NCBI GenBank assembly: GCA_950097015.1
Contig: CATNEN010000038.1
Location: 22,692,001 to 22,756,000 of the forward strand
Reading direction: 5' to 3'
DNA: 64,000 bases
DNA from: Macrostomum hystrix
Taxonomy: Eukaryota > Animalia > Platyhelminthes
Notes under the pieces: model-generated
Database searches by the model: none
Told to the model about the DNA's origin: nothing
Seen by the model: the letters and a program-made list of their open reading frames with translations, nothing else
Shown: piece after piece, positions 3,499 to 45,589 of the stretch
Layout: every line of letters starts with the position of its first letter
How positions within the stretch are numbered: position 1 is the first letter of the stretch
Translations under genes and position numbers: made by a program

Positions 3499-4482
3499 TA
3501 TCTTGCTTTGATAGGCATTGATTTTTTGTTAATGCTTAAAAATCATAAAAACCATAACGTGCCTAATGTGACCTTGAATTCCAAAAACTCTTATGATGTA
3601 GACAGCGCGTGATAGTTGGCCGTATGCTAAAAATAGCACATTTATCTTGATCTCGTCATTATGTTATTAAAAGATATTTAAGCTAATCTAAAAATAGCCG
3701 TTTTGGATTCCCCAACTTCGCCTTGATTGGTTGGCGGCTCGGTTCTAACTTGAAAAGCGACAATACGACAATTAAAGAGAAGAAGGCCTAATATTCATCA
3801 AATACCTGTTGAACTGCCTTCTTATTTTTTTTAACAAAAACAAATGTTTTTTAGGGAGAGAGCTGATAAATAAAAGCAGAACAGTTGAGCCTCTCAGTTT
3901 ATTTTGCGTTTTTAGTTATGGACGAAATAATGTTTCGCTTATTTTTTGTAGGAAAGAATGAAATACGAGTAGTATTATGCACGAGCTAAAATATTGGAAA
4001 ATTTTCGCACACCAAAATGTGATAAATACGTGTGGATAGAATGAATAAAAAAGTTTTTTTATGGGGAAATAATTTATGTTATGTCATATTAACATTATAT
4101 TGCAGGACGCAGCCTTCAAAATCGTATTGGCTGAGGTTTGCCACGTGATTCTTTCAAGTGGCTATCAAAAGTTGGCATTTCAAGAATCTTGTTCTAAAAA
4201 TAGAAACAGTTCAATCGTCGTTGGCCAATCAGATTTCGAAGTTCGCTTATCACCCTAACATATGTCCTCACAACATTGAATTTTTATTGCACAAAAAATA
4301 ACAACATAATCTTCTAGGTATTAAAGGTGAGCTAGTTGATAACCATTGAGCGTAAAAATATATATGATTGAAATAAGCAAGAAGAATGTCCTAAAACTTA
4401 CTGCAGAGTCACAATTTAAATAGGCAGATAAGACTGCGAATATCTAACTTCCGGTCGGTTAAAATATCGGCTTCCTTGTTTT

Positions 4483-4835
4483 TGTGGGAGGGAGCCACCA
4501 TGGATTTGTGAGGGTAGGGAGCCACCATGGATTTGTGGGGGTAGGGAGCCACCATGGATTTTTGGGGGTAGGGAGCCACCATGGATTTGTGGGGGTAGGG
4601 AGCCACCATGGATTTGTGGGGGTAGGGAGCCACCATGGATTTGTGGGGGTAGGGAGCCACCATGGATTTGTGGGGGTAGGGAGCCACCATGGATTTGTGG
4701 GGGTAGGGAGCCACCATGGATTTGTGGTTGAGCCACCATGGATTTGTGGGGGAGCCACCATGGATTTGTGGTTGAGCCACCATGGATTTGTGGGGGAGCC
4801 ACCATGGATTTGGATTTGTGGGAGGGAGCCACCAT
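4483..4835. repeat. 27-bp G-rich minisatellite (gtagggagccaccatggatttgtgggg)n
   Basis: Direct tandem units; explains ORFs 4409, 4416 and 4484. Confidence 0.95.
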
Positions 4836-5053
4836 TGATTCGCTTGAGTCCACCTGTCCTCCTATGGTATCTATATTCATAGGTCAACAACAACAACAAA
4901 AGCAAGATTAACATAACAAGATTAACTCGAAAAGCGTCGAATGCGAGGCTGATCGTACAAGGGACTAAACAAATTCGATAAATTACATGTTTCGAATTGA
5001 ATCCCCCTTTGTTAGGGTCAGAAGACTTCATTTTTAACATGATATTTGCGTCA

Positions 5054-8000
5054 TCACTGCTGCGATGGTGGCGGAGGCGGTGGCGGCGGCGGCGGTGCAC
5101 TCAGCGACAGCAAAGTCCTACGCCCGGTAGAGATTTTGCGTAGGGCACTGCTAATGATGGCCAGATCGCCTTTCAACTCGTTGACCACGTTAGCTATGCT
5201 GCGTGGCGAGTCCAGGACCTCAACAGACTGGGTGTACGGATTGTAGCGAACGTCGAATGGTCGACGAATGGTCTTGGCGAATTCACTGATAATGGACAAG
5301 GGAATCAAGTGGCAATTAGTGTTGTGGTAGTTGAAAAACTGACCAGAGGACTGTAGTTATGGCGGTTGATCAAAGGAATGTAGTGATGGCGGTTGATCAA
5401 AGGAAATGTAGTGATGGCGGCTGATCAAAGGAATGTAGTGATGATGGTTGATCAAAGGAATGTAGTGATGGCGGCTGATCAAAGGAATGTAGTGATGGCG
5501 GTTGATCAAAGGAATGTAGTGATGGCGGTTGATCAAAGGAAATGTAGTGATGACGGCTGATCAAGGAAATGTAGTGATGGCGGTTGATCAAAGGAATGTA
5601 GTGATGGCGGTTGATCAAAGGAATGTAGTGATGGCGGTTGATCAAAGGAATGTAGTGATGGCGGTTGATCAAAGGAATGTAGTGATGGCGGCTGATCAAA
5701 GGAATGTAGTGATGGCGGCTGATCAAAGGAATGTAGTGATGGCGGCTGATCAAAGGAATGTAGTGATGGCGGCTGATCAAAGGAATGTAGTGATGGCGGC
5801 TGATCAAAGGATTACTATGATTGCACTTGGATTAACGGCTCATCAAAGAACATTGAATTTTTCTGCAACTCACCGCATCTTTTCTTTTGCATCTTCGAAG
5901 CTGGGCGTGTAGAAGTAGCGATTCTGAAAGCTAGTCACCAGGCACTCTTCCATGGACACAGTTCTCGGATCAAACGAGTTGATTTCAGCCCTGCCGCTCA
6001 TTACGAACTGTGTGTTTGGAGTTTTCAAATATTTTGTTTGTGTAAATACAAAGAAAGTTTTCAATACGATTTGAAAGTCATTCACGACTGCTTTCCCCAA
6101 AAGGGTTTTCCCGAAGAATTTTTAAAAAATAGCTCGACGATGTAACACCCCGTCGTCCAATCAGATTTTCAGGTCCAACGGCGCTCACCCGAAACTCGTC
6201 CACGCAGGATAGGAGGCCCGCGCCGTAGACTTTCATTTCACCGTCCTGCTTGCACAAGCCGAACTCGATAGTGAAGAAGTAGCACTGAAACAAACCAAGT
6301 TGGATGGTTTAACTAATTTTAAGTTCCTAAAAATGCATACATTGTTAGCTACTTACAGTAGCCAGTTTCTGCACTTCTTCATCGCTGGCTCCCAATGAGG
6401 CCAGGCCAATCTCCTGGGAGAATTGGGCAAAGCTGGGATCGGCCAGTAGCGGCATGTGGCCCAGGATCTCGTGGCAGCAATCGCTAAAAGTAAAGCAATC
6501 AAATTGTTTTTTTAATTCTAGCCTTATTAACTAAAGGGCGCATGTACCCAAAATTATACTCATTCTTTCTATAAAGCGACACCCACCACACGCATAACTG
6601 TTTTTCTAGGCCTCATTCTTTCCAAAGCGCAGAGCATCCACCCCACGCCCTAGATTTTTCTCTTACCCCTTATTCCGTCCAAAGCGCTACACCCACCCCA
6701 CGCCCTAGCTTATTCTCTTACCCCTTATTCCGTCCAAAGCGCTACACCCACCCCACGCCCTAGCTTATTCTCTTACCCCTTATTCCGTCCAAAGCGCTAC
6801 ACCCACCCCACGCCCTAGCTTATTCTCTTACCCCTTATTCCGTCCAAAGCGCTACACCCACCCCACGCCCTAGCTTATTCTCTTATCCCTAATTCTGTCC
6901 AATCGGTTTCAAACTGCATCTTTAATTTTTTTAACTCCCTTCAGCACTCACGGCTCAGGCGTGTAGAACGGGTCGGCTCCATGTCGAATGTACTGCGTAC
7001 AGTGAAACACGCGAAACGCCAGGCCCGATAAGAAATCTCTAGCCGACAAATAGCCGGCTACTGGTCGCAGTACAAAGCCGGTGCGATCTTTCAGGTAATT
7101 GGAAATTTCCTCCAGTTGAGGTATATTATCCTCTCTGTGTATTTGGAAAGTGATTTTGCTAAGAAAATTGCAATGAACTTCCGAAATTGTAAATCTAAAC
7201 TGACCGATAGCCGCAGAATTTCTGCAGTTGAGGCAGATTTTCCAGGAACTCGCGACAGGCGTGCTTCTGATAGAGACTGCTCAACTCTTTGTACACAGCC
7301 GACCAGGTGCGAATCTCTTCAGCCGTGTAATCGATGCGCGGAATCGGCTCGCCCTGGCGATAATTGTAGGCCAAATCAGCGAACCACATGCGGCGCTTCC
7401 GGTACTCAGCGTCTTTGAAGCCCTGCAAATGAGATGCGGGAAAAACAGAAGTATATTGGGATGAAATGTTCAAAATGGGGACGAACTGTAGAAGTGGATA
7501 AAGTGCATAAAATTGGGATAGACTACAGTAACATGGGGATAGACTACAGTAACATGGGGATAAGCTAACTTACCATAGGGATTAACATAGTAGAAAAGGG
7601 ATAAACTACCGAAAACTGGTATCAACAACAATAAAGTGGAAAAACTTACCGGATGATCAGCGTCCAACTCGGAGCCGTACATGATGACTCGCCTGGACAC
7701 CTTGTCCAGATCCTGGATGCGCCTCGGGAACCACGGCAGACGCTCCATCGTCACTGAAGGATGCGATAGGAATTCACTGATTCATTCACTGATTCACTCA
7801 CTGATTCACTCACTGATTCACTCACTGATTCACTCACTGATTCACTCACTGATTCACTCACTGATTCACTCACTGATTCACTCACTGATTCACTCACTGA
7901 TTCACTCACTGATTCACTCACTGATTCACAAGATAGGAAGTCTGACTGCTCACTCTGTCTCTTCAGCATGCGTGAGTGATGCTGCCTGGCCTTCGCGACG

Positions 8001-9460
8001 CCTCCCAGATCCACAGCATCGTCAGCCGCTGCGGTCGACGTCGAGACGTCTTCGAAGGCGTCGCCGCTGGCGTCGTTGCCATCGCCGACTCTGTCGCTGT
8101 CGGTGGCAATCGCCACAGCGGCTGCATCGGCCTGATCAGGATCCAGGGACTTGTCGACTTCCTGAACTAGCACGGAATCCACCTCGGTCTTCAGCGCGTC
8201 GAGAAGACTCGGCAGCTTTGCTCGGTCGGCGTCTACATCGACGAAAATCTCGATAGGGGCTGATGCGCGTCGACCGCCGCGTGATTCAACGTGCATCACC
8301 TCGATGTTGTGCGCCTAGTGACGGATGCCAATTCTTATTTTTCTTAATAGTGGAAAGACCACGGACTGCCTAACTTTCAAAGCCGTCTAAGGTTAGCATC
8401 TTCGAGAATATTCTCACCTCGAAAACTTTTAGTATGCCGGTCAGGCCGCTAATATTGTTTCCAACCCCAAAGATGAACGACACGGTCTTCTTGGCGGCCT
8501 CGGCTGTCTCCATCACTGAGCCAAGATCCTTCAGCTTGTTCTGCGGGAGATAGAGACAGTGGGGAGAGAGAGGGAGACAGTGGGGAGAGAGAGGGAGACA
8601 GTGGGGAGAGAGAGGGAGACAGTGGGGAGAGAGAGGGAGACAGTGGGGAGAGAGAGGGAGACAGTGGGGAGAGAGAGGGAGACAGTGGGGAGAGAGAGGG
8701 AGACAGTGCGAGAGAGGGAGACAGTGGGGAGAGACAGGGAGACAGTGAGGAGAGACAGGGAGACAGTGGGGAGAGAGAGGGAGACAGTGAGGAGAGAGAG
8801 GGAGACAGTGAGAGAGAGAGGGAGACAGTGAGAGAGAGGGAGACAGTGAGGAGAGAGAGGGAGACAGTGAGAGAGAGGGAGACAGTGAGGAGAGAGAGGG
8901 AGACAGTGAGAGAGAGGGAGACAGTGAGGAGAGAGAGGGAGACAGTGAGGAGAGAGAGGGAGACAGTGAGAGAGAGGGAGACAGTGAGGAGAGAGAGGGA
9001 GACAGTGAGAGAGAGAGGGAGACAGTGAGAGAGAGGGAGACAGTGAGAGAGAGGGAGACAGTGAGGAGAGAGAGGGAGACAGTGAGAGAGAGAGGGAGAC
9101 AGTGAGGAGAGAGAGGGAGACAGTGAGGAGAGAGAGGGAGACAGTGAGGAGAGAGAGGGAGCCATTGTGAGGGAGGCAGCTCAATTGAGGTGTCACCTCA
9201 ATGCCGGAGATCTCTTCCTCGTCAATCATGGAGCTGACGGAGGAGAAGCGGCCTCTCCTGGCCTTGGCAGCCGCTGAATCCATGCAGTGCTGGCAGCAGC
9301 AGCCAAAGCAGCAAGAATTGCTTGAGTTAATGTCCTGAGTAGCGCTGTCCTCACCAACGGACGGCAGTCGATTGCCAGCGGCCAAACTGGACGATTCTGA
9401 ATCAGAATTGCGTGATCGATGGCGCCTCTTGTCAGCGTTGCATTTATTATTGGTTGCCAT
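5054..9460 (-). CDS. TPH: Tryptophan 5-hydroxylase (aromatic amino acid hydroxylase), 10 coding exons
   Basis: Exons (minus) 9460-9197, 8540-8418, 8314-7954, 7753-7650, 7422-7205, 7134-6952, 6483-6357, 6284-6189, 6007-5874, 5285-5054, all GT-AG and in phase. Contains the ACT domain (VMHVESR), [22 protein letters not shown], the Fe ligands in [14 protein letters not shown] and IEFGL, and the C-terminal YNPYTQ. VAGYLS (Tyr) and CYFFT (Phe) are TPH-type residues, whereas PAH has Leu and Trp. Confidence 0.93.
5358..5810. repeat. 27-bp minisatellite (gatcaaaggaatgtagtgatggcggtt)n in last TPH intron
   Basis: Direct tandem units. Confidence 0.95.
6620..6900. repeat. 55-bp tandem repeat (~5 copies) in TPH intron
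   Basis: tattccgtccaaagcgc recurs at 6671, 6726 and 6781. Confidence 0.9.
7772..7930. repeat. 12-bp repeat (tgattcactcac)n in TPH intron 3
   Basis: Perfect tandem units; gives the ESVS/HSLI artefact peptides. Confidence 0.95.
8550..9162. repeat. Purine-rich 17-21 bp minisatellite (gggagacagtgaggagagaga)n in TPH intron 1
   Basis: Direct tandem units. Confidence 0.95.
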
Positions 9461-29171: not shown

Positions 29172-32122
29172 ATGTCAGGGCAGGTGAGTCTACATCTGGT
29201 GTGTGTGTGCCTATATATACCATGCATCAGCGCCCATAGACATGCAATTATAATTATGTTAATTATTATATTAGTAAAATATAAGCATCAATAATGTAGA
29301 TAAGTATATGTTACACCATAAATTTTCATTTATTTTGTGCATCTATTCTATAGTATTATATTTGATATTAATTATAATTCAATATTTTATTCTATACCTA
29401 GGTAATGTTAACAAAGTATTAGAAATAGTTCATCTTGGTTTTGGCAGGCCCACATGCTGATGGCACTCCTGATGCACTCCTGTAATATAAAGTACAAAAA
29501 TGTACAATACATATTATAAAATACACATTCTTTCACTAGAAAATATCACCCTTTGTAGATCCAGCAGCATAGAACAATTCGATATGACATTGCACCCCTG
29601 TCACCACATTCGAAGCTGAGGCTAAGCAAGTTGTCTTTTACTATTTGTAATTTCTATAACATAATACATAAATATGTTAATTAAATATTTTTAACAATAC
29701 ATTTTTAGGTCGAGTTAGGCGAAAAATTTTAGTTCTGGATCTAGACGAGACCTTGATACATTCGCAGCATGATGGATTAGTACAAACTGGAACTCAATCT
29801 AGGACACCGTTTGATTTCTCTGTGCAGGCAAGGCATCTACTGAGTTGATAGAGCTAGTATCAGTGGGATGAGATCTAAATCTAACTGTAATCCCAATCCG
29901 ATCTCAGATCGATCCCAAATCCCTGATTCCAATCGGATCCTAAAAGATCCCAAATCCTTGATCCCAGATCCTTATCTGATCCTAAATCCCCGTCTAAACC
30001 CATGATCGAGCCCTAATCCCAATTTAATCCCTGATCGAGCGATAATCCCAATCTAATCCCTGATCGAGCCCTAATCCCAATCTGATCCCTGATCGAGCCC
30101 TAATCCCAATCTGAGCCCTTATCTAGCCATAATCCCAAATTGATTCCTGATACAGCCCTAATCTTCATCTCATCCCTGATCTTAAATAGATTTCAGATCC
30201 AAGTCATAACTTAGAACCGAGTCTGATCCCAGATCCCTATTTGATCCCAGTTCCCAACCCGACCTTAGATCAATCTAAAATCCTAGACCTCAATTCGATC
30301 GCAGTTCCCAATCTGATCCCAGATCCCCATCTGATCCCAGATCCCTATCTGATCCCAGATCTACATCTGATCCCGGATCCCCATCTGATCCCGGATCCCT
30401 ATCTGATCCCAGATCCCTATCTGATTCCAGATCTACATCTGATCCCGGATCCCCATCTGATCCCGGATCCCCATCTGATCCCAGATCCCTATATGATCCC
30501 AGATCCCTATCTGATCCCAGATCCCCATCTGATGCCAGATCCCCATCTGACGCAGATAATAGAAAAATTCATATTCCAGGTTCGAATCGAGCGGCACAAT
30601 GTTCGATTCTTTGTCCACAAACGGCCGCACGTTGATTTCTTCTTAGACGTTGTCAGCCAATGGTTCGATTTAGTGATTTTCACAGCTTCTCTGCAGATCT
30701 ACGGCGAAGCGGTTTCTAACCGATTAGACAACGGTAGGAAAATTCTTCGCTGCGGATACTACCGCCAGGACTGCCAGGTGGATAACGGTGGCTATACAAA
30801 AAATCTAACTGCAATATCGCCTGACCTGGCTTCCATATTTATTTTGGACAACTCGCCCGGAGCTTATCGATTCTTTCCTGGTAAGCGAGTTTTCATACTC
30901 TTTCGTTACCATATTACCAGGGGTCATCAAACTAATTAGCTAGCGGGTCAAAGAGAAAACCTAAGAAACGATAGCGGGCCGCATTGCCTGTATAAATATG
31001 AGATAGGGAAAAAAGACACGGGAGAGATAAGACACGGGAGAGATGAGACACGGTAGAGATGAGACACGGGAGAGATGAGACACGGGAGAGATGAGACACG
31101 TGAAATGACACAGGAGAGATAAAGCACAGGAGAGATAAGACACAGGAGAGATAAGACACAGGAGAGATAAGACACAGGAGAGATAAGACACAGGAGAGAT
31201 GAGACACAGGAGAGATGAGACACATAAGAGATAAGACACATAAGAGATAAGACACATTATGATTTTATTATTATTATTTTATAAAATATTCGCTATGAAA
31301 TTTTTCGATTCTTAGACCATAAATCGCATATTTTAAATCCCAAAAACGTTGGATCCTAGATCCCAGAATCCTTTCCACATTTTTAATGTCAAACAAAATC
31401 TTTCTGACAAGCGAGATCCCTAAAAATACTTTTTACAAATGTCCCATCCCAGATGGGGATCCGGGATCAGATGTTGATTTGGGATCAGATAAGGATCCCT
31501 GATCCCGAAAATCATTATAACAACACTAAATCCTAGACCCTGGACCTGAAAGAGTTTTTGGTTAATAAAAAATAGTAATTGATTACACCTGCCCCAATCG
31601 GGCCAGATTTGCAGCCGACAGCACAGCCGCAGCTATTGTGCGTCGCATCTGAAGGCTGCGTACGGCTGTTCAGTCCATGGACTGGGGGGACGCCACACCC
31701 ACCTTCAATTATCCCAGCTAATGCAGGTACCCATTTAACAGCTGAGGTGAACCGAAGCAATACAGAGTCAAGTGTCTTGCTAAAGGACACAAATTGTACA
31801 AGTGGAGTCGGGATTCGAACCCCCGACCTTGAAGTCGTAAATTCCGACGCCCTGATCCCTAGTCTAAAACCCCGTACTTTTTTGGTTAAGAGTATTAAAA
31901 CATCTGATGTCTGACTGAAAAAGCGTTTGAAATTCTCCAGAAAAAAAACAAACTTCTTTGATCATCTTGCACTCACGCTTTACAGACAACGCCATCCCGA
32001 TTGAGTCTTGGTTCTCAGACAGTTCAGACACTGCTCTGCTGTCCCTACTACCAATGTTGGATTCGATGCGTTTTGTTAGTGATGTGCGCAGTGTTCTGAG
32101 CCGAAAGTTGCACAGAACTTGA
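29172..32122 (+). CDS. CTDNEP1: CTD nuclear envelope phosphatase 1 (Dullard); 5' exon(s) uncertain
   Basis: Confident exons 29559-29625, 29709-29827, 30580-30880 and 31986-32122 encode [30 protein letters not shown] (HAD DxDxT), [30 protein letters not shown] and [38 protein letters not shown]. The start at 29172 (ATG TCA GGG CAG|gtgagt) is tentative. Confidence 0.88.
29880..30550. repeat. 18-bp minisatellite (atctgatcccagatcccc)n plus degenerate flank, in CTDNEP1 intron
   Basis: Tandem units; source of the IPDPHL artefact N-terminus of ORF 30241. Confidence 0.9.
31000..31256. repeat. GAGATAAGACACAGG-family minisatellite
   Basis: Tandem 16-bp units. Confidence 0.9.
31602..31873 (-). mobile_element. 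tRNA-derived SINE with CORE-like and Nin/Deu-like central segments
   Basis: Minus strand has a tRNA-like head with B box GGTTCGAATCC (31811-31821), ttgtgtcctttagcaagacacttga (CORE-like), cacctcagctgttaaatgggtacctg (Nin/Deu-like), and an ~85-bp 3' tail shared with the element at 38472. Confidence 0.8.
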
Positions 32123-33639: not shown

Positions 33640-35262
33640 TTAGTTGGTCATTACCCTTTTGTTTCACAATAATTTCAGTTGGTCATTACCCTTTGGTTTC
33701 CCACTCATTTCAGTTGATCATTTACCATAGGTAAATGACTCTTTCGTCATTTACTGTCGAAAGAGTTGGTCATTACTCTTTCGTTTCCCACATATATTAG
33801 TTGGTCATTACCCTTTAGTTTCACAATCATTTCAGTTGGTCATTACCCCTTTCATTTCAGTTGGTCATTACCCTTTCACTTCAGTTGGTCATTACCCTTT
33901 CATTTCAGTTGGTCATTACCCTTTCATTTCAGTTGGTCATTACCCTTTCATTTCAGTTGGTCATACCCTTTCATTTCAGTTGGTCATACCCTTTCATTTC
34001 AGTTGGTCATACCCTTTCATTTCAGTTGGTCATTACCCTTTCATTTCAGTTGGTCATTACCCTTTCATTTCAGTTGGTCATACCCTTTCATTTCAGTTGG
34101 TCATACCCTTTCATTTCAGTTGGTCATACCCTTTCATTTCAGTTGGTCATACCCTTTCTCATTTCAGTTGGTCATTAGCCTTTCATTTCAGTTGGTCATT
34201 AGCCTTTCATTTCAGTTGGTCATTAGCCTTTCATTTCAGTTGGTCATACCCTTTCATTTCAGTTGGTCATTAGCCTTTCATTTCAGTTGGTCATTAGCCT
34301 TTCATTTCAGTTGGTCATACCCTTTCATTTCAGTTGGTCATTAGCCTTTCATTTCAGTTGGTCATTAGCCTTTCATTTCAGTTGGTCATACCCTTTCTCA
34401 TTTCAGTTGGTCATTAGCCTTTCATTTCAGTTGGTCACTACCCTTTCATTTCAGTTGGTCATTAGCCTTTAATTTCAGTTGGTCATTACCCTTTCATTTC
34501 AGTTGGTCATACCCTTTCATTTCAGTTGGTCATTAGCCTTTAATTTCAGTTGGTCATTACCCTTTCATTTTAGTTGGTCATTAGCCTTTCATTTCAGTTG
34601 GTCATATCCTTTCATTTCAGTTGGTCATTAGCCTTTAATTTCAGTTGGTCATTACCCTTTCATTTCAGTTGGTCATACCCTTTCATTTCAGTTGGTCATT
34701 AGCCTTTAATTTCAGTTGGTCATTAGCCTTTCATTTCAGTTGGTCATACCCTTTCATTTCAGTTGGTCATTAGCCTTTAATTTCAGTTGGTCATTACCCT
34801 TTCATTTCAGTTGGTCATACCCTTTCATTTCAGTTGGTCATTAGCCTTTAATTTCAGTTGGTCATTAGCCTTTCATTTCAGTTGGTCATTAGCCTTTCAT
34901 TTCAGTTGGTCATTACCCTTTCATTTCAGTTGGTCATTACCCTTTCATTTCAGTTGGTCATTAGCCTTTCATTTCAGTTGGTCATTAGCTTTTCATTTCA
35001 GTTGGTCATTAGCCTTTCATTTCAGTTGGTCATACCCTTTCATTTCAGTTGGTCATTAGCCTTTAATTTCAGTTGGTCATTACCCTTTCATTTCAGTTGG
35101 TCATACCCTTTCATTTCAGTTGGTCATTAGCCTTTAATTTCAGTTGGTCATTACCCTTTCATTTCAGTTGGTCATACCCTTTCATTTCAGTTGGTCATAC
35201 CTTTTCATTTCAGTTGGTCATTACCCTTTCATTTCAGTTGGTCATTAGCCTTTCATTTCAGT
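33640..35262. repeat. 23/24-bp minisatellite (tttcatttcagttggtcattaccc)n upstream of PRMT
   Basis: Direct tandem units, each containing tttcatttcag. Confidence 0.95.
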
Positions 35263-35291
35263 TTCCAATAATAGAATATTTCTACTTACAG

Positions 35292-36494
35292 AGTTCCCCA
35301 GTTGATTACGCAACCAATGGCGCCTCTGCTACTGGCCTGGCGTCAGAGCCGGTTGCTAAGCAACGCTCTCGCAGTCGGTCACGTTCGCCTCTATCGTCGT
35401 CTAAATCGGATGTCAATTTTAAATTAGAAGACGCAGCTTACTTTGACTCTTACCAATGTCTGGAGGTGCACGCCACAATGGTATCTGATCGTGTTAGAAC
35501 ACTGGCTTATCGATACGCACTGATGCGAGCTTATCGATTGATTTATCGTCGAATTGGCATCGATATTGGCTGCGGCAGCGGTATATTAACGCATTTCGCC
35601 TGCGATGCCGGCGCCCGAACTGTCTATGGCCTGGAGGCTGCTAAGGAGATGTGCAAAGTTGCTAGAGAATTTCTCTCAGCCAATGGGCATCTTGCTAGCG
35701 GCAGGGCTGTTGTGATTGGCTGTCGGGCCGAATCTTTAACAAAGTTACCCGGCGGAGAATTAGCTGATTTTCTCGTAAGCGAATGGATGGGCTATTGTCT
35801 GCTATACGAGAATATGCTGGCCTCTGTTCTACAGGCCAGAGATAGGTTCTTGAAGCCAGACGGTCTTATGTTTCCTAATTCTGCTCGAGTCTTTGTCGCC
35901 GGCTACAATAGACCATCTTTTGACGAAGCGGACAGTGATTCGAGCTGCAATGATTTGTCTTCGCTTGGCGCTTTGTACGCCTGCAATATGTCGCCAATAG
36001 TGTCTGCCGTGAAGTCTCAACGAAGGTCAAAGCCCAGTGTGGCTCTTGTAGAGGATACCAGCTGTTTGTTAACCAATTCTGCCAGTCTGTTTAGCTTGGA
36101 TTTGAATAAGTTGACTCTGTCCGAGTTGAATAGCGGCCTGGCTACTAGGGGCAGCTTCCAATTAGACGTGATTCAGTGCGGAAAATTGGACGCTCTCTGT
36201 CTATGGTTTGAAGTTGGCTTCCCGGGCTCCGAGACTAGTTTGAGCACGTCGCCTTACACCGACGCAACTCACTGGCAGCAGACTTTAGTTTGGCTGCCGC
36301 AGAGTTGGCCAGTTACCATAGACAATCGACTGCGCGGCAGCATCGGTTTGAAATCCAATAGCGTTAGACGGCGCGATTTGGATATTGAAGTTGAATTGCT
36401 GCCCATTGAAGTAAAGGACAACAGTCAGAACAGTTTTGAAGCTGATAATAGTGACAGCTTGCGATTCACTGTCACTTTGGATTCCAACGCTTAG
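35292..36494 (+). CDS. Type I protein arginine methyltransferase, PRMT6-like; single coding exon with no ATG after the acceptor
   Basis: YFDSY, MVSDRVRTLAYR, motif I IDIGCGSGIL, double-E loop VSEWMGYCLLYENML, RFLKPDGLMFP and THW loop STSPYTDATHWQQT. The frame opens at ttacag|AGT (35292). The PRMT6 assignment is from recalled similarity only. Confidence 0.88.
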   Translation, partial: SSPVDYATNGASATGLASEPVAKQRSRSRSRSPLSSSKSDVNFKLEDAAYFDSYQCLEVHATMVSDRVRTLAYRYALMRAYRLIYRRIGIDIGCGSGILTHFACDAGARTVYGLEAAKEMCKVAREFLSANGHLASGRAVVIGCRAESLTKLPGGELADFLVSEWMGYCLLYENMLASVLQARDRFLKPDGLMFPNSARVFVAGYNRPSFDEADSDSSCNDLSSLGALYACNMSPIVSAVKSQRRSKPSVALVEDTSCLLTNSASLFSLDLNKLTLSELNSGLATRGSFQLDVIQCGKLDALCLWFEVGFPGSETSLSTSPYTDATHWQQTLVWLPQSWPVTIDNRLRGSIGLKSNSVRRRDLDIEVELLPIEVKDNSQNSFEADNSDSLRFTVTLDSNA

Positions 36495-36789
36495 TAATGT
36501 AGGGAAATAACAAGTCTGTCTCTTACTAACTTTGTTCTACGTTACTTTTATGCCTTGATATGCATTCACGCTTTTATTACTTTGAACTAATTAAAAAAAC
36601 TATTTTATGCACGCTACTCACAGTAGATAAGTGGGGAAAGCGTTCTAATAAGCATTTGTTCTCGCATTTTTTCCGAAAAAAGTCTGTCTATTGATTTTTT
36701 AACACTTATTATTTTATTTCTTGTTAGCCAAATTTACACGCAGCTATTGCATGGCGCATCCTAAAACATTGTACAGTTAATCCATCCGC

Positions 36790-38045
36790 CCTCTCTTATC
36801 TCTCCCCTGCCTCATATATCCCGTGCCTAATCTCTCTCCTGTCTCATATCTCCCCTGTCTCATCTCTCCTGTCTCATCTCTCCCCTGTCTCATCTCTCTC
36901 CTGTCTCATCTCTCTCCTGTCTCATCTCTCCTGTCTCATCTCTCTCCTGTCTCATCTCTCTCCAGTCTCATCTCTCCTGTCTCATCTCTTCCCTGTCTCA
37001 TCTCTCTCCTGTCTCATCTCTCTCCTGTCTCATCTCTTCTGTCTCATCCCTCCCAAGTCTCATCTCTCCCCTGTCTCATCTCTCTCCTGCTCTTATATCT
37101 CCCTGTCTCATTTCTCCCTGTCTCATCTCTTCTGTCTCATCCCTCCTAAGTCTCATCTCTCTCCTGTCTCATCCCTCCCAAGTCTCATCTCTCCCCTGTC
37201 TCATCTCTCTCCTGTCTCATCTCTCTCCTGTCTCATCCCTCCCAAGTCTCATCTCTCCCCTGTCTCATCTCTCTCCTGTCTCATCTCTCTCCTGTCTCAT
37301 CTCTTCTGTCTCATCCCTCCCAAGTCTCATCTCTCCCCTGTCTCATTTCTCCCCTGTCTCATCTCTCTCCTGCTCTTATATCTCCCTGTCTCATCTCTCC
37401 TGTCTCATCTCTCCTGTCTCATCCCTCCCAAGTCTCATCCCTCCCCTGTCTCATCTCTCCTGCTCTTATATCTCCCTGTCTCATCTCTCCCCTGTCTCAT
37501 CTCTCCTGTCTCATCTCTCCCCTGTCTCATCTCTCTCCTGTCTCATCTCTCTCCTGTCTCATCTCTTCTGTCTCATCCCTCCCAAGTCTCATCTCTCCCC
37601 TGTCTCATTTCTCCCCTGTCTCATCTCTCTCCTGCTCTTATATCTCCCTGTCTCATCTCTCCTGTCTCATCCCTCCCAAGTCTCATCCCTCCCAAGTCTC
37701 ATCTCTCCCCTGTCTCATCTCTCCTGTCTCATCTCTCCCCTGTCTCATCTCTCTCCTGTCTCATCTCTCTCCTGTCTCATCTCTTCTGTCTCATCCCTCC
37801 CAAGTCTCATCTCTCCCCTGTCTCATTTCTCCCCTGTCTCATCTCTCTCCTGCTCTTATATCTCCCTGTCTCATCTCTCCTGTCTCATCTCTCCTGTCTC
37901 ATCCCTCCCAAGTCTCATCCCTCCCCTGTCTTGTCTCACAAATTTCTAATCTCTCGCCTGTCTCATATTTTCCCTGTTCTCCCTTTTCTTATCTCTTTTT
38001 TAATATATTTCTTATCTCTCTGTGTCTTACCTTTTATCTCTCCTC
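36790..38045. repeat. GAGATGAGACAGG-family minisatellite (pyrimidine strand on +) between PRMT and NARS2
   Basis: (ctgtctcatctctc)n variants. Confidence 0.95.
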
Positions 38046-38155
38046 TTTCAATACGGCCCAGTAGCTTCATTTAGGTAGGAGTATTTTCGGCCTGAATTAT
38101 ATTTTTGGTTTCCAATCTCTGCTCTAAATAAATCAAAGTAACCAAATTCTTGCAG

Positions 38156-41100
38156 CATCTCAAACCCTGTAGTTTTCGTGCCATCGTCGTGTGGCGCAAA
38201 TGTCTGAGCAGTCTCATTTGCCGAAATTACTGCTCCAATAGTCGTCGGATCTGTTTAAAAGAGATTTTCGGCCAGTCCATCGATGCTTACAATGGCAGCC
38301 CAGTCAGTCTAGTTGGCTGGGTTAGTAATTTGCGTCGTCAGAAGCGCGTCAGTTTTATTGAATTAAGCGACGGTACCACGGCGAAAACTTTGCAGGTTAG
38401 CTTTCTTAACTACTTTGAGTAGGATATAATTAGACAGTATAGAAATCAACGCTGAAAACAGAAGCACTTTAGCCAGAGCCACAGCCGCAGCTATTGCGCC
38501 GCGCATCTGAAGACTGCGTATAGCTGTTCAGTCCATGGACTAGGGCGACGCCACACCCCTTGGAGAAGGCTTGGGGGCTTGTCGTGCAATTGACACCCTT
38601 GAGGGCCAACCTCCAAGGCACAGTGAGAGTGTACACTGCTTGACGATAAGAAAGTCAGGGCAGATGTACACACCTTTGTGAGCGTGTGCCTGCGTACAGT
38701 ATCTGTGTGCGTGTGTGCTCAGGAGGCAGCAAAATGGGCAGAATTGCCTCCTCGCTGGCTGCGAGTCTAGAGTCACCAAATGATGTGCCATTGCCCACAA
38801 GTCTCCTGTAGTTATTAATACTTTCATTATTTTTTTTTTCTAGTATAGTCTAGAATCGAACTCATGACCTACAAGTCGTGAGTCCAACGCTCTAAACACT
38901 AGGCTACAACCCATAAGGCAACAGACAGATAGATGGATATACAGACATCTGTACATCTATACAGACAGGTAGATGTACGCGCAGACAGGTAGCTAGACAG
39001 CCAGTATAAACAAGTAGATATCGAGTCTCCTGTCGGATTTCCGCAGGTTGTTGTCTCGCCGTCAGACCTGTTGCCAGCCGACCTGTCCACGGACTGTTGC
39101 GTCACCGTTGCAGGCAGTTTGTCCCGCAGCGATCGGGCGGTCAACGGTATGGAGCTTCGGGCAACCGGCCTCGTACTGTCCGGCCCAGTTGATCGCACCG
39201 CCGGCGTCAGCTTTCATCAGGATCAGCGCTCGGATACCGCTCGCAGAAGGCTGCACCTGAGGCCTAGACTTGCCGCATTTCAGGCCGTCTGCAGACTACG
39301 CGGCGCGCTAAATGGCGCTTTGAGAGCCGCGCTCGATAGTAGGCACTACCTGGAGGTGAGGCAAGGGGGATTGTGAGGTTGGCAGGTTTTTACTGGTAGA
39401 TTCACATACAGGTAAATAGATTTACAGACTGGTAGATAGATTTACAGACAGGTAGATAGATTTACAGACTGGTAGATAGATTTACAGACAGGTAGATAGA
39501 TTTACAGACTGGTAGATAGATTTACAGACTGGTAGATAGATTTACAGACTGGTAGATATATTTACAGACTGGTAGATAGATTTACAGACTGGTAGATATA
39601 TTTACAGACAGGTAGATGGATTTACAGACAGGTAGATAGATTTACAGACAGGTAGATGGATTTACAGACAGGTAGATGGATTTACAGACTGGTAGATAGA
39701 TTTACAGACAGGTAGATATATTTACAGACTGGTAGATAGATTTACAGACAGGTAGATATATTTACAGACTGGTATATAGATTTACAGACTGGTAGATAGA
39801 TTTTTCAGACAGGTAGATGGATTTACAGACAGGTAGATGGATTTACAGACTGGTAGATAGATTTACAGACAGGTAGATATATTTACAGACTGGTAGATAG
39901 ATTTACAGACAAGTAGATAGATTTACAGACAGGTAGATAAATTTACAGACTGGTAGATAGATTTACAGACAGGTAGATATATTTACAGACTGGTAGATAG
40001 ATTTACAGACTGGTAGATAGATTTACAGACTGGTAGATAGATTTACAGACAGGTAGATATATTTACAGACTGGTAGATATATTTACAGACAGGTAGATGG
40101 ATTTACAGACAGGTCGATAGATTTACGGACAGGTAGATGGATTTACAGACAGGTAGATATATTTACAGACTGGTAGATAGATTTACAGACTGGTAGATGG
40201 ATTTACAGACTGGTAGATCGATTTACAGACTGGTAGATAGATTTACAGACTGGTAGATATATTTACAGACTGGTAGATAGATTTACAGACTGGTAGATAT
40301 ATTTACAGACTGGTAGATAGATTTACTGACAGGTAGATATATTTACAGACTGGTAGATAGATTTACAGACAGGTAGATCTACAGACCTTTAGATAGATGT
40401 CCACCTGCCCCCATTCCGCTCAGGTGGAAGCGCCAGTTCTAACTAGCAACGATTGCGAAGGCGCCGGTGAAACTTTTCGTCTAGCCGATTCGGAGGAATT
40501 CTTTCGCCAACCCGTCCATCTGACAGTGTCCGCCCAGTTACACTTGGAAGCTTTGGCACTAGGCCTATCCAGAGTCTATTGTCTGGGTCGAGCATTCAGA
40601 GCTGAAAAATCTCAAACTACTTATCACCTGGCTGAGTTCTCTATGCTAGAAGCTGAGTCTACCGACCTAGACTCCGTTGAAGCGTTGTGCAATCACGTCG
40701 AGTGGCTGTTAAAGACGGTCACTGGAGAGGTAAGGCGTTAGTTAGATATTAGAGACAATTTTAAGTGTGCTTTATCACCTGTCCTTGAGGTCTTTTATCC
40801 TCCGTACTTCAGGTCTTCGGATGGGTCGGTTATCCACCCGTCCTGCAAGTCTATTATCCACCTGTCCTTCAGGCTAATTATCCACCTGTCCTTCAGGCTA
40901 ATTATCCACCTGTCCTTCAGGCTAATTATCCACCTGTCCTTCAGTTCCGTTGTCCACCTGTCCTTCAGTTCCGTTGTCCACCTGTCCTTCAGTTCCATTG
41001 TCCACCTATCCTTCAGTTCCGTTGTCCGCCTGTCCTTCAGTTCCATTGTCCACCTGTCCTTCAGTTCCATTGTCCACCTGTCCTTCAGGCTAATTATCCA

Positions 41101-41971
41101 CCTGTCCTTCAGGCTAATTATCCACCTATCCTTCAGTTCCGTTGTCCACCTGTCCTTCAGTTCGATTGTCCACCTGCCCTTCAGTTCCATTGTCCACCTG
41201 TCCTTCAGTTCCATTATCCACCTGTCCTTCAGTTCCATTGTCCACCTGTCCTTCAGTTCCATTGTCCACCTGTCCTTCAGTTCCATTGTCCACCTGTCCT
41301 TCAGTTCCATTATCCACCTGTCCTTCAGGTCAATTATCTAACTGATAAGTCAGTATATTTAATTTCAGGTGCTTTCTCGCTATTCCGCCGATCTAAATCT
41401 AATCGTCAATTCAGAAAGCGTCAACCATAAATATTCTACACCTGAAACAATCAATAGCCTTCTAACTAAGCCGTTTGTTCGTCTAAAATTTGCCGAAGCT
41501 GTCAAAACATTGATAAACAGCTGCGGCATTTCCTTTGAAGTGCCGCCAACTGTCGGCATGCTTGATCTAAGGCGCGAACACGAGTTAGCTCTGGTTAAAT
41601 TGTGCGACAATGCTCCAGTATTTGTCACCGATTATCCGGCTGAATCGCGCGCATTCTACTGCGCCCAGTCTGGCCCCGGTCTGGCAGCCAGTTTCGATCT
41701 TCTATTGCCCGGCGTCGGCGAAGTTCTCGGCGCCAGCGTTCGCGAATCCGACGCCGACCGGCTGACCGGAGCGATGCGTCAACGCGGCCTGCCAGAGTCG
41801 GCCGCTGAGCGTCTCGATTGGTATCTGGAACTGCGCAGTTTCGGCTGCGCGCCACACGGCGGCTACGGCCTTGGAATGGATCGATTTATGCGATTCTTAA
41901 TTGGTAGCGGCGCAACGCCCGTCAAAGAGCTTGTGCCTTTTCCCAGGTCGTTTCAACACTGTCCAGCTTGA
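38156..41971 (+). CDS. NARS2: Mitochondrial asparaginyl-tRNA synthetase, 4 exons; no genomic ATG
   Basis: Exons 38156-38395, 39047-39355, 40424-40729 and 41369-41971, GT-AG phase 0. OB fold GWVSNLRRQKRVSFIELSDGT..LQVV, LHLRPR, PVLTSNDCEGAGETF, LTVSAQLHLE, motif 2 FRAEKSQTTYHLAEFSMLEAE and motif 3 WYLELRSFGCAPHGGYGLGMDRF. The N-terminus is basic and acid-free, resembling a mitochondrial presequence. Confidence 0.92.
38472..38912 (-). mobile_element. tRNA-derived SINE in NARS2 intron 1
   Basis: Minus-strand head tagcctagtgtttagagcgttggactcacgacttgtaggtcatgagttcgattct (A- and B-box-like). The tail 38472-38557 closely matches 31618-31700. Confidence 0.75.
39405..40385. repeat. 20-bp minisatellite (tttacagactggtagataga)n in NARS2 intron 2
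   Basis: Direct tandem units. Confidence 0.95.
40830..41335. repeat. 24-bp minisatellite (tccacctgtccttcagttccattg)n in NARS2 intron 3
   Basis: Direct tandem units. Confidence 0.93.
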
Positions 41972-42195
41972 GACTAAATATAATTTGCTTATTATTTTTC
42001 ATCGAAAATTTTATAGATATTATAGTCTTTTTGTTTATTGAAGTAATCGATTAGTAACATAAATTATTTTACTTGGTTTTGAAAGAAATTATGAAGCTAA
42101 CAAAGCTAATTCCTTCTCTGAATCACATTGGACGACAACCTTAAGTTGTCTAAAATTAGGGCTTAATGAATAATAATACTTCTATAAATATCGTA

Positions 42196-42278
42196 TGACG
42201 TCATTATATTTTTACTGTTTCTAAAAATAGCTATTGAGTCATTAACTGCGATATTTCCGAAAATAGCTAATGACGTCA
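42196..42278. promoter_or_regulatory. CRE / AP-1 / CRE palindrome cluster between NARS2 and HDAC8
   Basis: TGACGTCA 42196-42203, TGAGTCA 42235-42241 and TGACGTCA 42271-42278 within a degenerate ~38-bp triplication; function not shown. Confidence 0.35.
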
Positions 42279-42778
42279 CTTGCTGAGTTTCTTTGTATAA
42301 ATAAATAAAATGGGGCTGCGACTATTTTGCCGATTATTGTGTTACTAAAAAAGTATAAAATTTTTAAGGTATTTTTTACCTTGCTGGACAAAGTTTCATA
42401 CAATCATGTAGCTTATTCAAGTAGTTACATAAAATACTAGAACTTCTAGAAGCTAGGTCAATTCCCACCATAGGTTTTACAAAGCTTGGAGATTATCGCT
42501 TTTGATCATTTCTTCACAAATGTACTTTTAAATTTTCAACGCCTGTGCTTTAACTAAATGATTGTTACTTGCGATTGAAAAACGGCATTTTCTATATAAA
42601 ATTTTTAATTAGGAGCTGAACGACTTCTCGGCTTATTTATTACTTTCCAGTAAATTTTAACATAAGGTTTCGTATCTTACCTCTTAAAGGACACCTCAAC
42701 CTGTCAATCATACATCTTAAACAAAGGCACCAAGCATGTCCTGTGCTGAAATCTCCGCTCAATACTATATTTTTCAAG

Positions 42779-45416
42779 GCTGCCACAGTGTCGCTCCCGC
42801 CCGCTCGCGATCGCCGAGTAGCCCTCGCCTACAGTCGCCAACTGGTTGAGCTGAGCTCTCAATTACCAAAAGTGCGCGGCAGATCAATCCTTGTACATTC
42901 GCTGATTAACGCCTACAAACTGTTAGACAAGCTCACCGTACTCACTGATATTAGACCTCTGTCAGACTCAACTCTGTTGGGCTTTCATTCCGAAGCTTAT
43001 CTGTCCGCTCTCAAGCGAGTCAGCGACTCTGATTTAGAGGCCGATGAGTTAGACTCGGACTTGTTAGAGTACGGCTTCGCTTATGATTGTCCGCCTGTTC
43101 GCGGAGCCTTTGACATCGCCTCATTGGTTGCTGGCGCCACCGCCTCGGCCGCCGAAGCCCTGACCGCTGGCCAATTCGATGTGGCCATCAATTGGACCGG
43201 CGGTTGGCATCACGCTAAACGCGACGAAGCCTCCGGTTTCTGCTACATCAACGACATTGTCTACGGCGTGCTGGAATTGAAGAAACGCTTCGAACGGGTT
43301 ATGTACGTCGATTTAGACCTGCACCATGGCGATGGTGTTGAAGAAGCTTTCTATTATTCGTCTGGTATACTCACGGTGAGCAGATGCACGCAACTGTGCT
43401 CATGTGTGCTCATGTGTACTCAGGTGTACTCAGGTGTACTCAGGTGGTCAGCGTAATAGGCGGAATCGCCTCTTAGCTGGCTGCGAGTAGAAATTCGTAA
43501 TTTTTCTTCTCCTCAATTTCTTCCGGCCGTTCTTCTACCCCAAATCTTCCCTTATCTTCTACCCAAAATCTTCCCTTATCTTCTACCCCAAATCTTCCCT
43601 TATCTTCTACCCAAAATCTTCCCTTATCTTCTTCCCCAAATCTTGCCTTATCTTCTACAACAAATCTTCCCTTATCTTCTTCCCCAAATCTTACCTAATC
43701 TTCTTCCCCAAATCTTCCCTTATCTTCTTCCCCAAATCTTCCCTTATCTTCCACCTTTAATCTTTCCTGTTCTTGTACCAAATTCTTCAAATATCTCCTC
43801 TCTCAAGTCTACCCTTGATTATTCATTCCCATAAGTTTCTTCAATGTCTCAAAATTGTGGTCTTGAATTTTCCTAAAACCATTATTTTCCGCACCACTTA
43901 ACAATGTCCATTCGCCAAGGTGTCATTCCACTATCGAGCTGACGGCTTCTTCCCCGGCAGCGGCAGCGCCGACGACATCGGCTCCGGTCCGGGCCGCTAC
44001 GCCAGCGTCAACGTGCCGCTGAAGGAGGGCGTCACCGATGAACAATTCGCGGCCAGCTTTGCCACAGTTATGGAGGCCGCTCTCGAATCGTTTGATCCTG
44101 GCGCCATTGTCTGCCAGTGCGGCGCCGACGCTCTGGCTACAGATGAGTTTAAGGTCAGCGACTTTTGAGTTGTGTTTTTGATATTCCGTTTGCTTTTTAA
44201 TAATATTTTTGTGCTTAGATAATCATTTAGCTTCTTGAAGATAATCCGATAAGTTTCTTAGATAGTCCGATAAGTTTCTTCGATAATCCGATAAGTTTCT
44301 TAGAGAATCCGTAAAGTTTCTTAGAGAATCCGATAAGTTTCTTAGAGAATCCGATAAGTTTCTTAGAGAATCCGTTAAGTTTCTTAGATAATCTGTTAAG
44401 TTTCTTAGATAATCCGATTCTTAGATAATCCAATACGTTTCTTAAATAATCCGATTCTTAGATAATCCGATAAGTTTCTTAGATAGTCCGATAAGTTTCT
44501 TCGATAATCCTTAGAGAATCCGTAAAGTTTCTTAGATAATCCGATAAGTTTCTTAGAGAATCCGATAAGTTTCTTAGAGAATCCGTAAAGTTTCTTAGAG
44601 AATCCGTAAAGTTTCTTAGAGAATCCGTAAAGTTTCTTAGAGAATCCGTAAAGTTTCTTAGAGAATCCGTAAAGTTTCTTAGAGAATCCGTAAAGTTTCT
44701 TAGATAATCCGATAAGTTTCTTAGAGAATCCGATAAGTTTCTTAGATAATCCGATTCTTAGATAATCCAATACGTTTCTTAAATAATCCGATTCTTAGAT
44801 AATCCGATAAGTTTTTTTTCTTAGATAATGAGTTGCATTTCGTTATATATAACCGGATGATTTGTAAATGATACATTTTTATCGTTTAGTTTTCATAGTT
44901 CATTAGGTTTAACAGTTGAATAATCCGATTGTCAGTTTAGTCTGTTTAGATAATCCAATTGTATGTTTAGATAATCCGTTTGTCTCTTCTTAATAATCGA
45001 ATTTTCTATTTTTACGAATCCTGCCAGTTAAAATCGTTCATAACACACATCCAATATTTCCTCACACTTAACAATGCCTCTAATCCCAGATCTTCAACCT
45101 GACGCTAACCGGCTATCTGGACTGCGTCAAGCGGCTAATCCAAAGCCGCCGTCCTCTGCTGTTGCTAGGCGGCGGTGGGTATCACTTTCCTTCCACCGCC
45201 AAGCTGTGGACAGCGCTCACAGCTCTAGCTGTGAATGTTGAACTGGACAAGGACATACCCGAGCACGATTTCTTCTCACAGTATGGCCCAGACTTCTGTC
45301 TGGATGTTACACCATCTCTTAAACGCAATCTGAACGACTCAACGGAGCTTAAACTGGTCGTCGAAGCGGTGACAGAGAATCTGAAACACCTTGGCGATGC
45401 ATTGCACCTGCGTTGA
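42779..45416 (+). CDS. HDAC8: Histone deacetylase 8 (class I), 3 exons; no in-frame genomic ATG
   Basis: Exons 42779-43375, 43920-44153 and 45090-45416. Motifs GFAYDCP, AINWTGGWHHAKRDEASGFCYIND (Trp is HDAC8-type), YVDLDLHHGDGVEEAF, GFFPGSG, VCQCGAD, LLLGGGGY and DIPEHDFFSQYGPDF. AATAAA at 45419-45424. Confidence 0.93.
43525..43765. repeat. 24-bp repeat (cttcccttatcttctaccccaaat)n in HDAC8 intron 1
   Basis: Direct tandem units. Confidence 0.9.
44235..44830. repeat. 21-bp minisatellite (tttcttagagaatccgtaaag)n in HDAC8 intron 2
   Basis: Direct tandem units. Confidence 0.93.
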
Positions 45417-45589
45417 TCAATAAATAGACATTTTCAGTTTAGTGAACTTATTGGTTCAGCTTTTTTCTACCAAGCTATCAGAGTACGATAAGAAAGATAA
45501 TGGTAATTATTACCTGTTTCACTTAATTAATAAGTTGATTCCTAGCATCAATTCGACAGGTAATAAGTTGAAGCTACTGGTTGGCTGTT

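What the first reader, a model, noticed from the sequence alone, without database searches (positions are those of the whole stretch)
35280..42800. Three consecutive genes lack a start codon and begin in phase 0 after a splice acceptor: the initiator AUG is probably donated by a trans-spliced leader
Seen: PRMT opens at ttacag|AGT TCC CCA (35292), NARS2 at ttcttgcag|CAT CTC AAA (38156) and HDAC8 at ttttcaag|GCT GCC ACA (42779). None has an in-frame ATG upstream before a stop. The first internal Met lies beyond essential motifs: after YFDSY in PRMT, late in the OB fold in NARS2, and after the catalytic HH in HDAC8. All three junctions are phase 0 (1/27 if phase were random). Adding just ATG gives sensible N-termini: MHLKPCSFRAIVVWRKCLSSLICRNYCS resembles a mitochondrial presequence, and MAATVSLPPARDRRVALAYS matches the length of HDAC8's N-terminus. 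Known: platyhelminth spliced leaders end in AUG, which can act as the initiator Met. Inference: translation of these genes depends on SL trans-splicing.
Basis: partly seen in the sequence, partly recalled or inferred. Interest (0 to 1): 0.9.

Follow-up and report, generated by a model that had tools for sequence, protein, structure and literature searches.

The report
Spliced leader supplies three genes' start codons
In this Macrostomum hystrix flatworm locus three neighbouring housekeeping genes have no start codon of their own, and assembled RNA shows for two of them that the trans-spliced leader, which ends in AUG, is joined in frame directly before their first codon; this mechanism is already known in flatworms.

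Summary
A PRMT6-like gene, a mitochondrial-type asparaginyl-tRNA synthetase (NARS2) and HDAC8 lie head to tail on the + strand. Each reading frame opens right after an AG acceptor. None has an in-frame genomic ATG before essential motifs.

The genome statistics match the published M. hystrix assembly exactly. It carries many copies of the 35-nt Macrostomum spliced leader (SL), which ends in ATG and is followed by a GTAAG donor.

RNA contigs from four public runs (one study) start with the last 23 nt of that SL. They are joined exactly at 38156 (NARS2) and 42779 (HDAC8), in frame, and then follow GT..AG introns.

It remains inferred, and four in-frame acceptors (35214, 35238, 35262, 35292) are equally possible. 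Use of the SL AUG in translation is inferred, not shown.

SL-donated initiator AUGs were described in Schistosoma in 2006, and the M. hystrix genome paper remarks on the terminal ATG. This scan's notes already report the same thing for TRMT10C and RFC4 elsewhere in this genome. These are new examples of a known mechanism. An operon reading is possible but unproven.

The parts
33827..35263 (+). 24-nt tandem repeat (about 60 units) that abuts the PRMT 5' end. Each unit contains TTTCAG, which matches the Macrostomum trans-splice acceptor motif [T/C]TNCAG. It holds no ATG in the PRMT frame from 35067 on.
   Evidence: motif from PMC8629364
35286..35291 (+). Predicted SL trans-splice acceptor of the PRMT6-like gene (cTTACAG|). 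Not tested with reads. The acceptors before 35262, 35238 and 35214 are also in frame and stop-free.
35292..36494 (+). PRMT6-like type I protein arginine methyltransferase. Single exon, 400 codons plus stop, no initiator ATG. First in-frame ATG at 35478 (residue 63).
38150..38155 (+). SL trans-splice acceptor of NARS2 (TTGCAG|), shown by RNA contigs.
   Evidence: loose end GCGAAGACTCAATTTATTGCAT before 38155 in the runs shown; contigs in all 4 runs have 22 unmatched 5' letters
38156..38395 (+). NARS2 exon 1. 80 codons: presequence-like N-terminus and the start of the OB fold. No ATG in frame.
39047..39355 (+). NARS2 exon 2. 103 codons; contains the first in-frame Met, residue 115.
40424..40729 (+). 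NARS2 exon 3 (102 codons).
41369..42062 (+). NARS2 exon 4. 200 codons, stop at 41969-41971, about 90-nt 3' UTR. Contigs end at 42056-42062.
42773..42778 (+). SL trans-splice acceptor of HDAC8 (TTCAAG|), shown by RNA contigs.
   Evidence: loose end GCGAAGACTCAATTTATTGCAT before 42778; contigs in all 4 runs
42779..43375 (+). HDAC8 exon 1. 199 codons, includes the catalytic HH. First in-frame ATG at 43301.
43920..44153 (+). HDAC8 exon 2 (78 codons). The 5' boundary comes from contigs. The 3' boundary is inferred from a GT donor and homology.
45090..45416 (+). HDAC8 exon 3. 108 codons plus TGA, with AATAAA at 45420. Inferred from an AG acceptor, frame, homology and contig length. It lies outside the stretch that was laid.

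Best explanation
The three genes are transcribed as precursors whose 5' part (the outron) is removed by spliced-leader trans-splicing. The 35-nt SL exon (CGGTCTCTTACTGCGAAGACTCAATTTATTGCATG) is joined to the acceptor so that its last three bases, AUG, sit directly in front of the first genomic codon, in phase 0. That AUG is the only AUG in the SL and the first in the mature mRNA. It is followed by an uninterrupted frame through the whole protein, so it serves as the initiator Met. The products would be 401 aa for PRMT6-like (if 35292 is the site), 486 aa for NARS2 with a basic presequence-like N-terminus, and about 386 aa for HDAC8. Without trans-splicing, no full-length protein can be made from an AUG.

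Shown: the SL RNA genes, the SL-exon junctions for NARS2 and HDAC8, the frames, and the absence of a genomic ATG.

Inferred: initiation at the SL AUG, and the PRMT junction.
For: - G000 has 220,453,370 bases in 42 contigs. This is identical to the published M. hystrix assembly.
- The exact SL occurs at least 23 times and is followed by GTAAG. It folds into three stem-loops with a U-rich Sm-like site.
- the contigs are spliced at GT..AG introns, so they derive from RNA. In X3-X6 they carry 22 unmatched 5' letters, GCGAAGACTCAATTTATTGCAT, and then match from 38155 and 42778. Both of those bases are G, so the SL's final G coincides with the G of the acceptor AG. There are 0 mismatches.
- Exon lengths are all multiples of three and free of stops.
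- There is no in-frame ATG upstream. Every ATG before the first in-frame one is out of frame and opens only a short ORF.
- Essential parts lie upstream of the first internal Met.
- The PRMT and NARS2 acceptors fit the published [T/C]TNCAG trans-splice motif.
- Precedent: in S. mansoni the SL AUG is in frame in 28% of trans-spliced mRNAs, and more than 40 cDNAs need it (PMC9851317). All flatworm SLs end in AUG (PMC12582326). The M. hystrix paper notes the terminal ATG as a start codon.
Against: - There is no read evidence for the PRMT junction. The single read-laying run was limited to 6,000 letters, which could cover only two of the three junctions.
- All four runs belong to one study.
- Logan contigs drop rare isoforms, so minor cis-spliced 5' exons cannot be excluded.
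- No protein-level or ribosome-profiling evidence shows that the SL AUG is used.
- The context of the SL AUG has U at -3, which is weak by vertebrate Kozak rules.
- The HDAC8 acceptor (TTCAAG) does not fit the consensus motif, although reads show it is used.
Confidence: 0.85

Rival explanations
1. The proteins start at internal AUGs or at near-cognate codons. The SL AUG is skipped or only makes a dispensable extension.
For: The SL AUG has a weak -3 base (SL sequence). It lies only 32 nt from a hypermodified cap (general knowledge of SL RNAs, quoted). HDAC8 has an in-frame GTG four codons in.
Against: The internal Mets lie after YFDSY in PRMT, at residue 115 in the NARS2 OB fold and after the catalytic HH in HDAC8. 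Three out-of-frame AUGs with short ORFs precede each first in-frame AUG. With the SL Met, the N-terminal lengths match the human orthologues.
Confidence: 0.05
2. Upstream cis-spliced exons carrying a genomic ATG exist and share the same acceptors. The SL form is one isoform among several. This is most relevant to PRMT, whose junction was not seen.
For: In parasitic flatworms, trans- and cis-splicing often share acceptors (PMC12582326). Contigs drop rare variants (note). Low-depth contigs lie at 42196-42586, upstream of HDAC8.
Against: In all four runs the only assembled 5' ends of NARS2 and HDAC8 are SL ends. No joint enters 38156 or 42779 from upstream. Upstream of PRMT lie 1.4 kb of tandem repeat and then the 3' end of another gene.
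Confidence: 0.07
3. The three genes, possibly with upstream CTDNEP1, are cistrons of one polycistronic SL-resolved operon. The shared lack of ATG reflects that organisation rather than three independent cases. This is compatible with the best explanation and adds to it.
For: All are on the + strand. Spacers are short: stop 36494 to acceptor 38155 is 1,661 nt, of which 1,189 are tandem repeat, leaving about 470 nt. The NARS2 3' end at about 42060 to the acceptor at 42778 is about 720 nt. Both fall under the 1-kb repeat-adjusted threshold used for M. lignano operons.
Against: No contig bridges two genes. There is no coverage in 37990-38154. The NARS2-HDAC8 spacer holds two TGACGTCA palindromes and TATAAATA at 42296, and low-depth contigs begin at 42320-42367. 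That pattern looks like a separate HDAC8 promoter with an outron of about 450 nt.
Confidence: 0.35

Closest known systems
Flatworm SL 3'-terminal AUG used as initiator Met (Schistosoma mansoni; Cheng, Cohen, Ndegwa & Davis 2006, J Biol Chem 281:733, as cited in PMC9851317 and PMC12582326)
   Same: The SL ends in AUG directly before the GU donor. It is joined in frame to an exon that lacks its own AUG, so the recipient mRNA needs the SL AUG to encode a full-length conserved protein.
   Different: A different species (a free-living macrostomorph) and different genes. Here there are three adjacent genes. No translation assay exists for this species.
Macrostomum SL trans-splicing as annotated in M. 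lignano, M. cliftonense and M. hystrix (PMC8629364, PMC5730564, PMC10468722)
   Same: The identical 35-nt SL and the same acceptor motif. About 20-30% of genes are trans-spliced. The M. hystrix paper states that the SL probably contains the final ATG start codon.
   Different: In the text I read, those papers do not list genes that depend on the SL AUG. These three genes are specific examples.
slORFs (ORFs created by SL addition; PMC9851317)
   Same: The start codon is supplied by the SL.
   Different: slORFfinder was applied to nematodes, Oikopleura and trypanosomes, mostly with non-AUG starts. Here a true AUG starts the main conserved ORF.

Membership tests
mRNA with SL-donated initiator AUG (flatworm type) | The genome encodes an SL RNA whose leader ends in AUG immediately 5' of the GU donor, with an Sm site and a three-stem-loop fold | tested here: met
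   exact SL at least 23 times, followed by GTAAG; fold, z = -3.6
mRNA with SL-donated initiator AUG (flatworm type) | The mature mRNA carries the SL joined at the proposed acceptor | tested here: met
   for NARS2 (38156) and HDAC8 (42779), four runs from one study.
mRNA with SL-donated initiator AUG (flatworm type) | The SL AUG is in frame with the conserved ORF, with no stop between | tested here: met
mRNA with SL-donated initiator AUG (flatworm type) | No genomic in-frame AUG can give a complete protein | tested here: met
mRNA with SL-donated initiator AUG (flatworm type) | Translation actually initiates at the SL AUG | not testable with these tools
   Needs N-terminal proteomics, ribosome profiling or a reporter assay.
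SL-resolved operon | Same-strand neighbours with a repeat-adjusted spacer under 1 kb, and downstream genes that are SL trans-spliced | tested here: met
   criterion from PMC8629364.
SL-resolved operon | A polycistronic precursor spans the genes from a single promoter | tested here: inconclusive
   there are no bridging contigs, only low-depth spacer contigs at 42196-42586. TATA- and CRE-like motifs lie upstream of HDAC8.
Type I PRMT (PRMT6-like) | SAM-binding Rossmann domain, PRMT C-terminal beta-barrel and the N-terminal YFxxY motif | tested here: met
   (PF22528, PF13649). (PRMT1 and PRMT6 structures, E 1e-43 to 1e-51, with YFDSY aligned). (the named best hits are PRMT6-like).
Asparaginyl-tRNA synthetase, mitochondrial/bacterial type (NARS2) | OB anticodon-binding domain plus a class II core that matches asnS, closer to bacterial than to cytosolic AsnRS, with an N-terminal targeting sequence and a separate cytosolic paralogue | tested here: met
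   (asnS equivalog models, exon by exon). (three AsnRS chains not labelled cytoplasmic score best, 9e-29 to 5e-25; chains labelled cytoplasmic score 5e-20 and weaker, human NARS1 7e-18). (second AsnRS locus on C37). The presequence was judged by composition only.
HDAC8 (class I histone deacetylase) | Hist_deacetyl domain with the catalytic HH, best match to HDAC8 and a short N-terminus | tested here: met
   (human HDAC8 E 3e-56, against 1e-40 for RPD3/HDAC1-3).

The most novel reading that the evidence does not exclude
Macrostomum may have moved start codons to the spliced leader on a large scale. Whole runs of neighbouring essential genes, perhaps cistrons of one operon as here, would then be untranslatable without trans-splicing. 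SL addition would act as an obligatory gate on translation for much of the housekeeping proteome, far beyond the roughly 40 cDNAs reported in Schistosoma.
Probability: 0.3. Interest if true: 0.45.

Novelty: new member of a known kind. Interest (0 to 1): 0.25.

Why it matters
Gene predictors that require a genomic ATG will truncate or miss such genes. The models would begin at Met63 for PRMT, Met115 for NARS2 and Met175 for HDAC8, which removes the mitochondrial presequence or catalytic residues. Annotations of Macrostomum genomes need to add the SL AUG at mapped trans-splice sites.

Biologically, these genes depend on trans-splicing for their expression. The cases add to evidence from other windows of this genome (TRMT10C, RFC4) that such dependence is not rare in this genus. 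The mechanism itself is not new.

Tried and rejected
- PRMT junction by the protein route. I searched the whole single-exon PRMT hoping to find a Macrostomum transcript-derived protein whose contig would show the 5' end. The best hit was 37% identical and none was from Macrostomum, so no contig could be fetched.
- Retrocopy or paralogue of the PRMT 5' end in the genome that might preserve an SL junction: the locus is single copy.
- Cheng et al. 2006 is not held in the paper library. It is cited only through PMC9851317 and PMC12582326.
- tRNA and Rfam identity for the highly covered element in NARS2 intron 1: no match.
- I had mis-counted an in-frame stop at 42719 by hand. The script corrected it to 42617-19.
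- The joined (spliced) protein models of NARS2 and HDAC8 were not searched.
Full report
**Source.** The window is G000:C38:22692001-22756000. G000 has 220,453,370 bases in 42 contigs. These are exactly the figures published for the Macrostomum hystrix assembly (PMC10468722). I take the organism to be M. hystrix, a free-living macrostomorph flatworm.

**Observation.**
- Pfam identifies a type I protein arginine methyltransferase in one exon (35292-36494). It also identifies a class II Asn/Asp/Lys-type tRNA synthetase with an OB fold, and a histone deacetylase.
- PDB searches make them PRMT1/PRMT6-like, AsnRS and HDAC8.
  - The three best AsnRS chains are not labelled cytoplasmic (9e-29 to 5e-25). 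Chains labelled cytoplasmic score 5e-20 and weaker, with human NARS1 at 7e-18.
  - Human HDAC8 scores 3e-56, against about 1e-40 for RPD3/HDAC1-3.
- NCBIfam asnS models match NARS2 exons 2-4. A second AsnRS locus exists on contig 37, which fits a cytosolic plus mitochondrial pair.
- A script found no in-frame ATG between the nearest upstream in-frame stop and each junction.
- The first in-frame Met is residue 63 in PRMT, residue 115 in NARS2 and residue 175 in HDAC8. These lie after YFDSY, in exon 2 inside the OB-fold region, and after GGWHHAK respectively.
- Every ATG before the first in-frame one is out of frame and opens only a short ORF.
- With one added Met, the HDAC8 N-terminus differs from the human one by one residue. 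The PRMT N-terminal tail has the length of human PRMT6's.
- The first 36 residues of NARS2 have eight K/R and no D/E.
- The '1/27' figure is not a real test, since the genes were chosen for lacking an ATG.

**The spliced leader.**
- The 35-nt M. lignano SL (PMC8629364) occurs without mismatch at least 23 times in G000, and 149 times within 3 mismatches. The reversed control gave none.
- It is followed by GTAAG, a U-rich Sm-like site and hairpins.
- The 109-nt unit folds into the canonical three stem-loops (z = -3.6).
- Its only ATG is the last three bases.

**RNA evidence.**
- One run search was allowed. Four runs of one study (X3-X6) hold about half of the words of 35270-45000.
- The three junctions span 7.5 kb, so I laid 37990-43989, which covers two of them.
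- The contigs skip 38396-39046, 39356-40423, 40730-41368 and 43376-43919 at GT..AG and have no mismatches. They are therefore RNA-derived and from this species.
- In all four runs the NARS2 contig and the HDAC8 contig start with 22 letters that do not match the genome, GCGAAGACTCAATTTATTGCAT. They then match from 38155 and 42778.
- Both of those genomic bases are the G of the acceptor AG, which coincides with the last G of the SL. The RNA therefore reads ...TTATTGCATG|CATCTC and ...TTATTGCATG|GCTGCC.
- The 23 letters are positions 13-35 of the canonical SL.
- All exons are multiples of three and stop-free, so the SL AUG opens a 486-codon NARS2 frame and an HDAC8 frame of about 386 codons.
- HDAC8 exon 2's 3' end and exon 3 are inferred from splice signals, homology and contig length, because they lie outside the laid stretch.

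**PRMT.**
- No reads could be laid here.
- The gene is single copy, and no Macrostomum orthologue was found in the protein collection.
- The acceptor cTTACAG fits the published trans-splice motif [T/C]TNCAG.
- The 24-nt tandem repeat that abuts it (33827-35263) carries TTTCAG in every unit. The sites before 35214, 35238 and 35262 are also in frame and stop-free.
- Any of these would give the same dependence on the SL AUG, with up to 26 extra codons.
- I put about 85% on SL trans-splicing of PRMT and about 70% on 35292 as the exact site. These figures are inference.

**Mechanism.**
- Shown: the SL RNA genes, the SL-exon joints for two genes, the frames, and the absence of genomic start codons.
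- Inferred: the ribosome starts at the SL AUG.
- The inference rests on three points:
  - It is the first AUG in the mRNA.
  - All other AUGs are out of frame or lie beyond essential residues.
[quoted passage not shown] 2006 as summarised in PMC9851317; see also PMC12582326).
- The M. hystrix genome paper itself remarks that the SL probably contains the final ATG as a start codon. Its supplement says flatworm SL AUGs are sometimes used for initiation.

**Operon question.**
- The spacers are short once repeats are subtracted: about 470 nt and about 720 nt. Both are below the 1-kb threshold used for M. lignano.
- The upstream + strand gene is CTDNEP1-like.
- No contig bridges two genes.
- The NARS2-HDAC8 spacer has two TGACGTCA palindromes and a TATAAATA at 42296. 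Low-depth contigs start about 25-70 nt downstream of it, which suggests HDAC8 has its own promoter.
- I leave the operon reading at about 35%.

**Comparison and novelty.**
- This is the flatworm SL-initiator-AUG mechanism, with new member genes in a species where the SL's ATG had been noted but, in the papers I read, no dependent genes were listed.
- Notes of this scan report the same on other DNA of this genome. TRMT10C (three copies) and RFC4 are described there as confirmed by RNA. GNB1L and TSC2 are candidates. I did not re-test those.
- The practical value is for annotation, because ATG-requiring predictors will truncate these genes.

**Limits.**
- All runs come from one study, and contigs hide rare isoforms.
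- PRMT was not covered.
- There are no protein data.
- Spliced models were searched exon by exon only, and the joined step was left out.

Noticed in passing
L009 (G000:C39:12667700-12669800); array C39:12667884-12685526 and beyond: A second SL RNA gene type. Its leader differs from the canonical SL at 3 positions (CGGTCTCTTACTGCGAAGACTCTCTTTTTTGCATG) and also ends in ATG|GTAAG. Stem-loops 2 and 3 have a different sequence but the same three-hairpin fold, with an Sm-like AUUUUUG. It occurs once per 927-bp unit together with a 5S rRNA gene, in at least 24 tandem copies. Only the canonical SL was seen on the two mRNAs laid here. Whether the variant is used is unknown.
   Followed up: partly
L010 (G000:C15:9000-18999); arrays on C15, C17, C42 with an 11.6-kb period: The canonical SL RNA gene sits once per 11.6-kb ribosomal DNA unit, together with 18S, 5.8S, 28S and a U1 snRNA gene.
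   Followed up: partly
window 38563-38830 (NARS2 intron 1); related copy about 31580-31910: A dispersed repeat of about 268 bp. The first look found at least 2,299 candidate copies in the genome, at about 90-93% identity. RNA contig depth over it is very high (3,600-8,500), with consistent differences from this copy. It looks SINE-like. There is no tRNA or Rfam match.
   Followed up: partly
window 33827-35263: A 1.4-kb array of a 24-nt unit in which every copy contains a consensus trans-splice acceptor (TTTCAG). It ends 28 nt before the PRMT acceptor. That makes about 60 potential decoy or alternative acceptors.
   Followed up: partly
window 42185-42310: Two TGACGTCA (CRE-like) palindromes and TATAAATA lie between NARS2 and HDAC8. 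Low-depth RNA contigs begin at 42320-42367, which suggests an HDAC8 promoter and an outron of about 450 nt.
   Followed up: no
window 29560-32119 (+): A CTDNEP1/Dullard-like phosphatase gene lies upstream on the same strand, with its stop at 32119. Its first exon was not located.
   Followed up: no
window 38396-45089: All five introns of NARS2 and HDAC8 are phase 0, and most hold long tandem repeats: 39397-40378, 40833-41335, 43531-43788 and 44239-44814.
   Followed up: no
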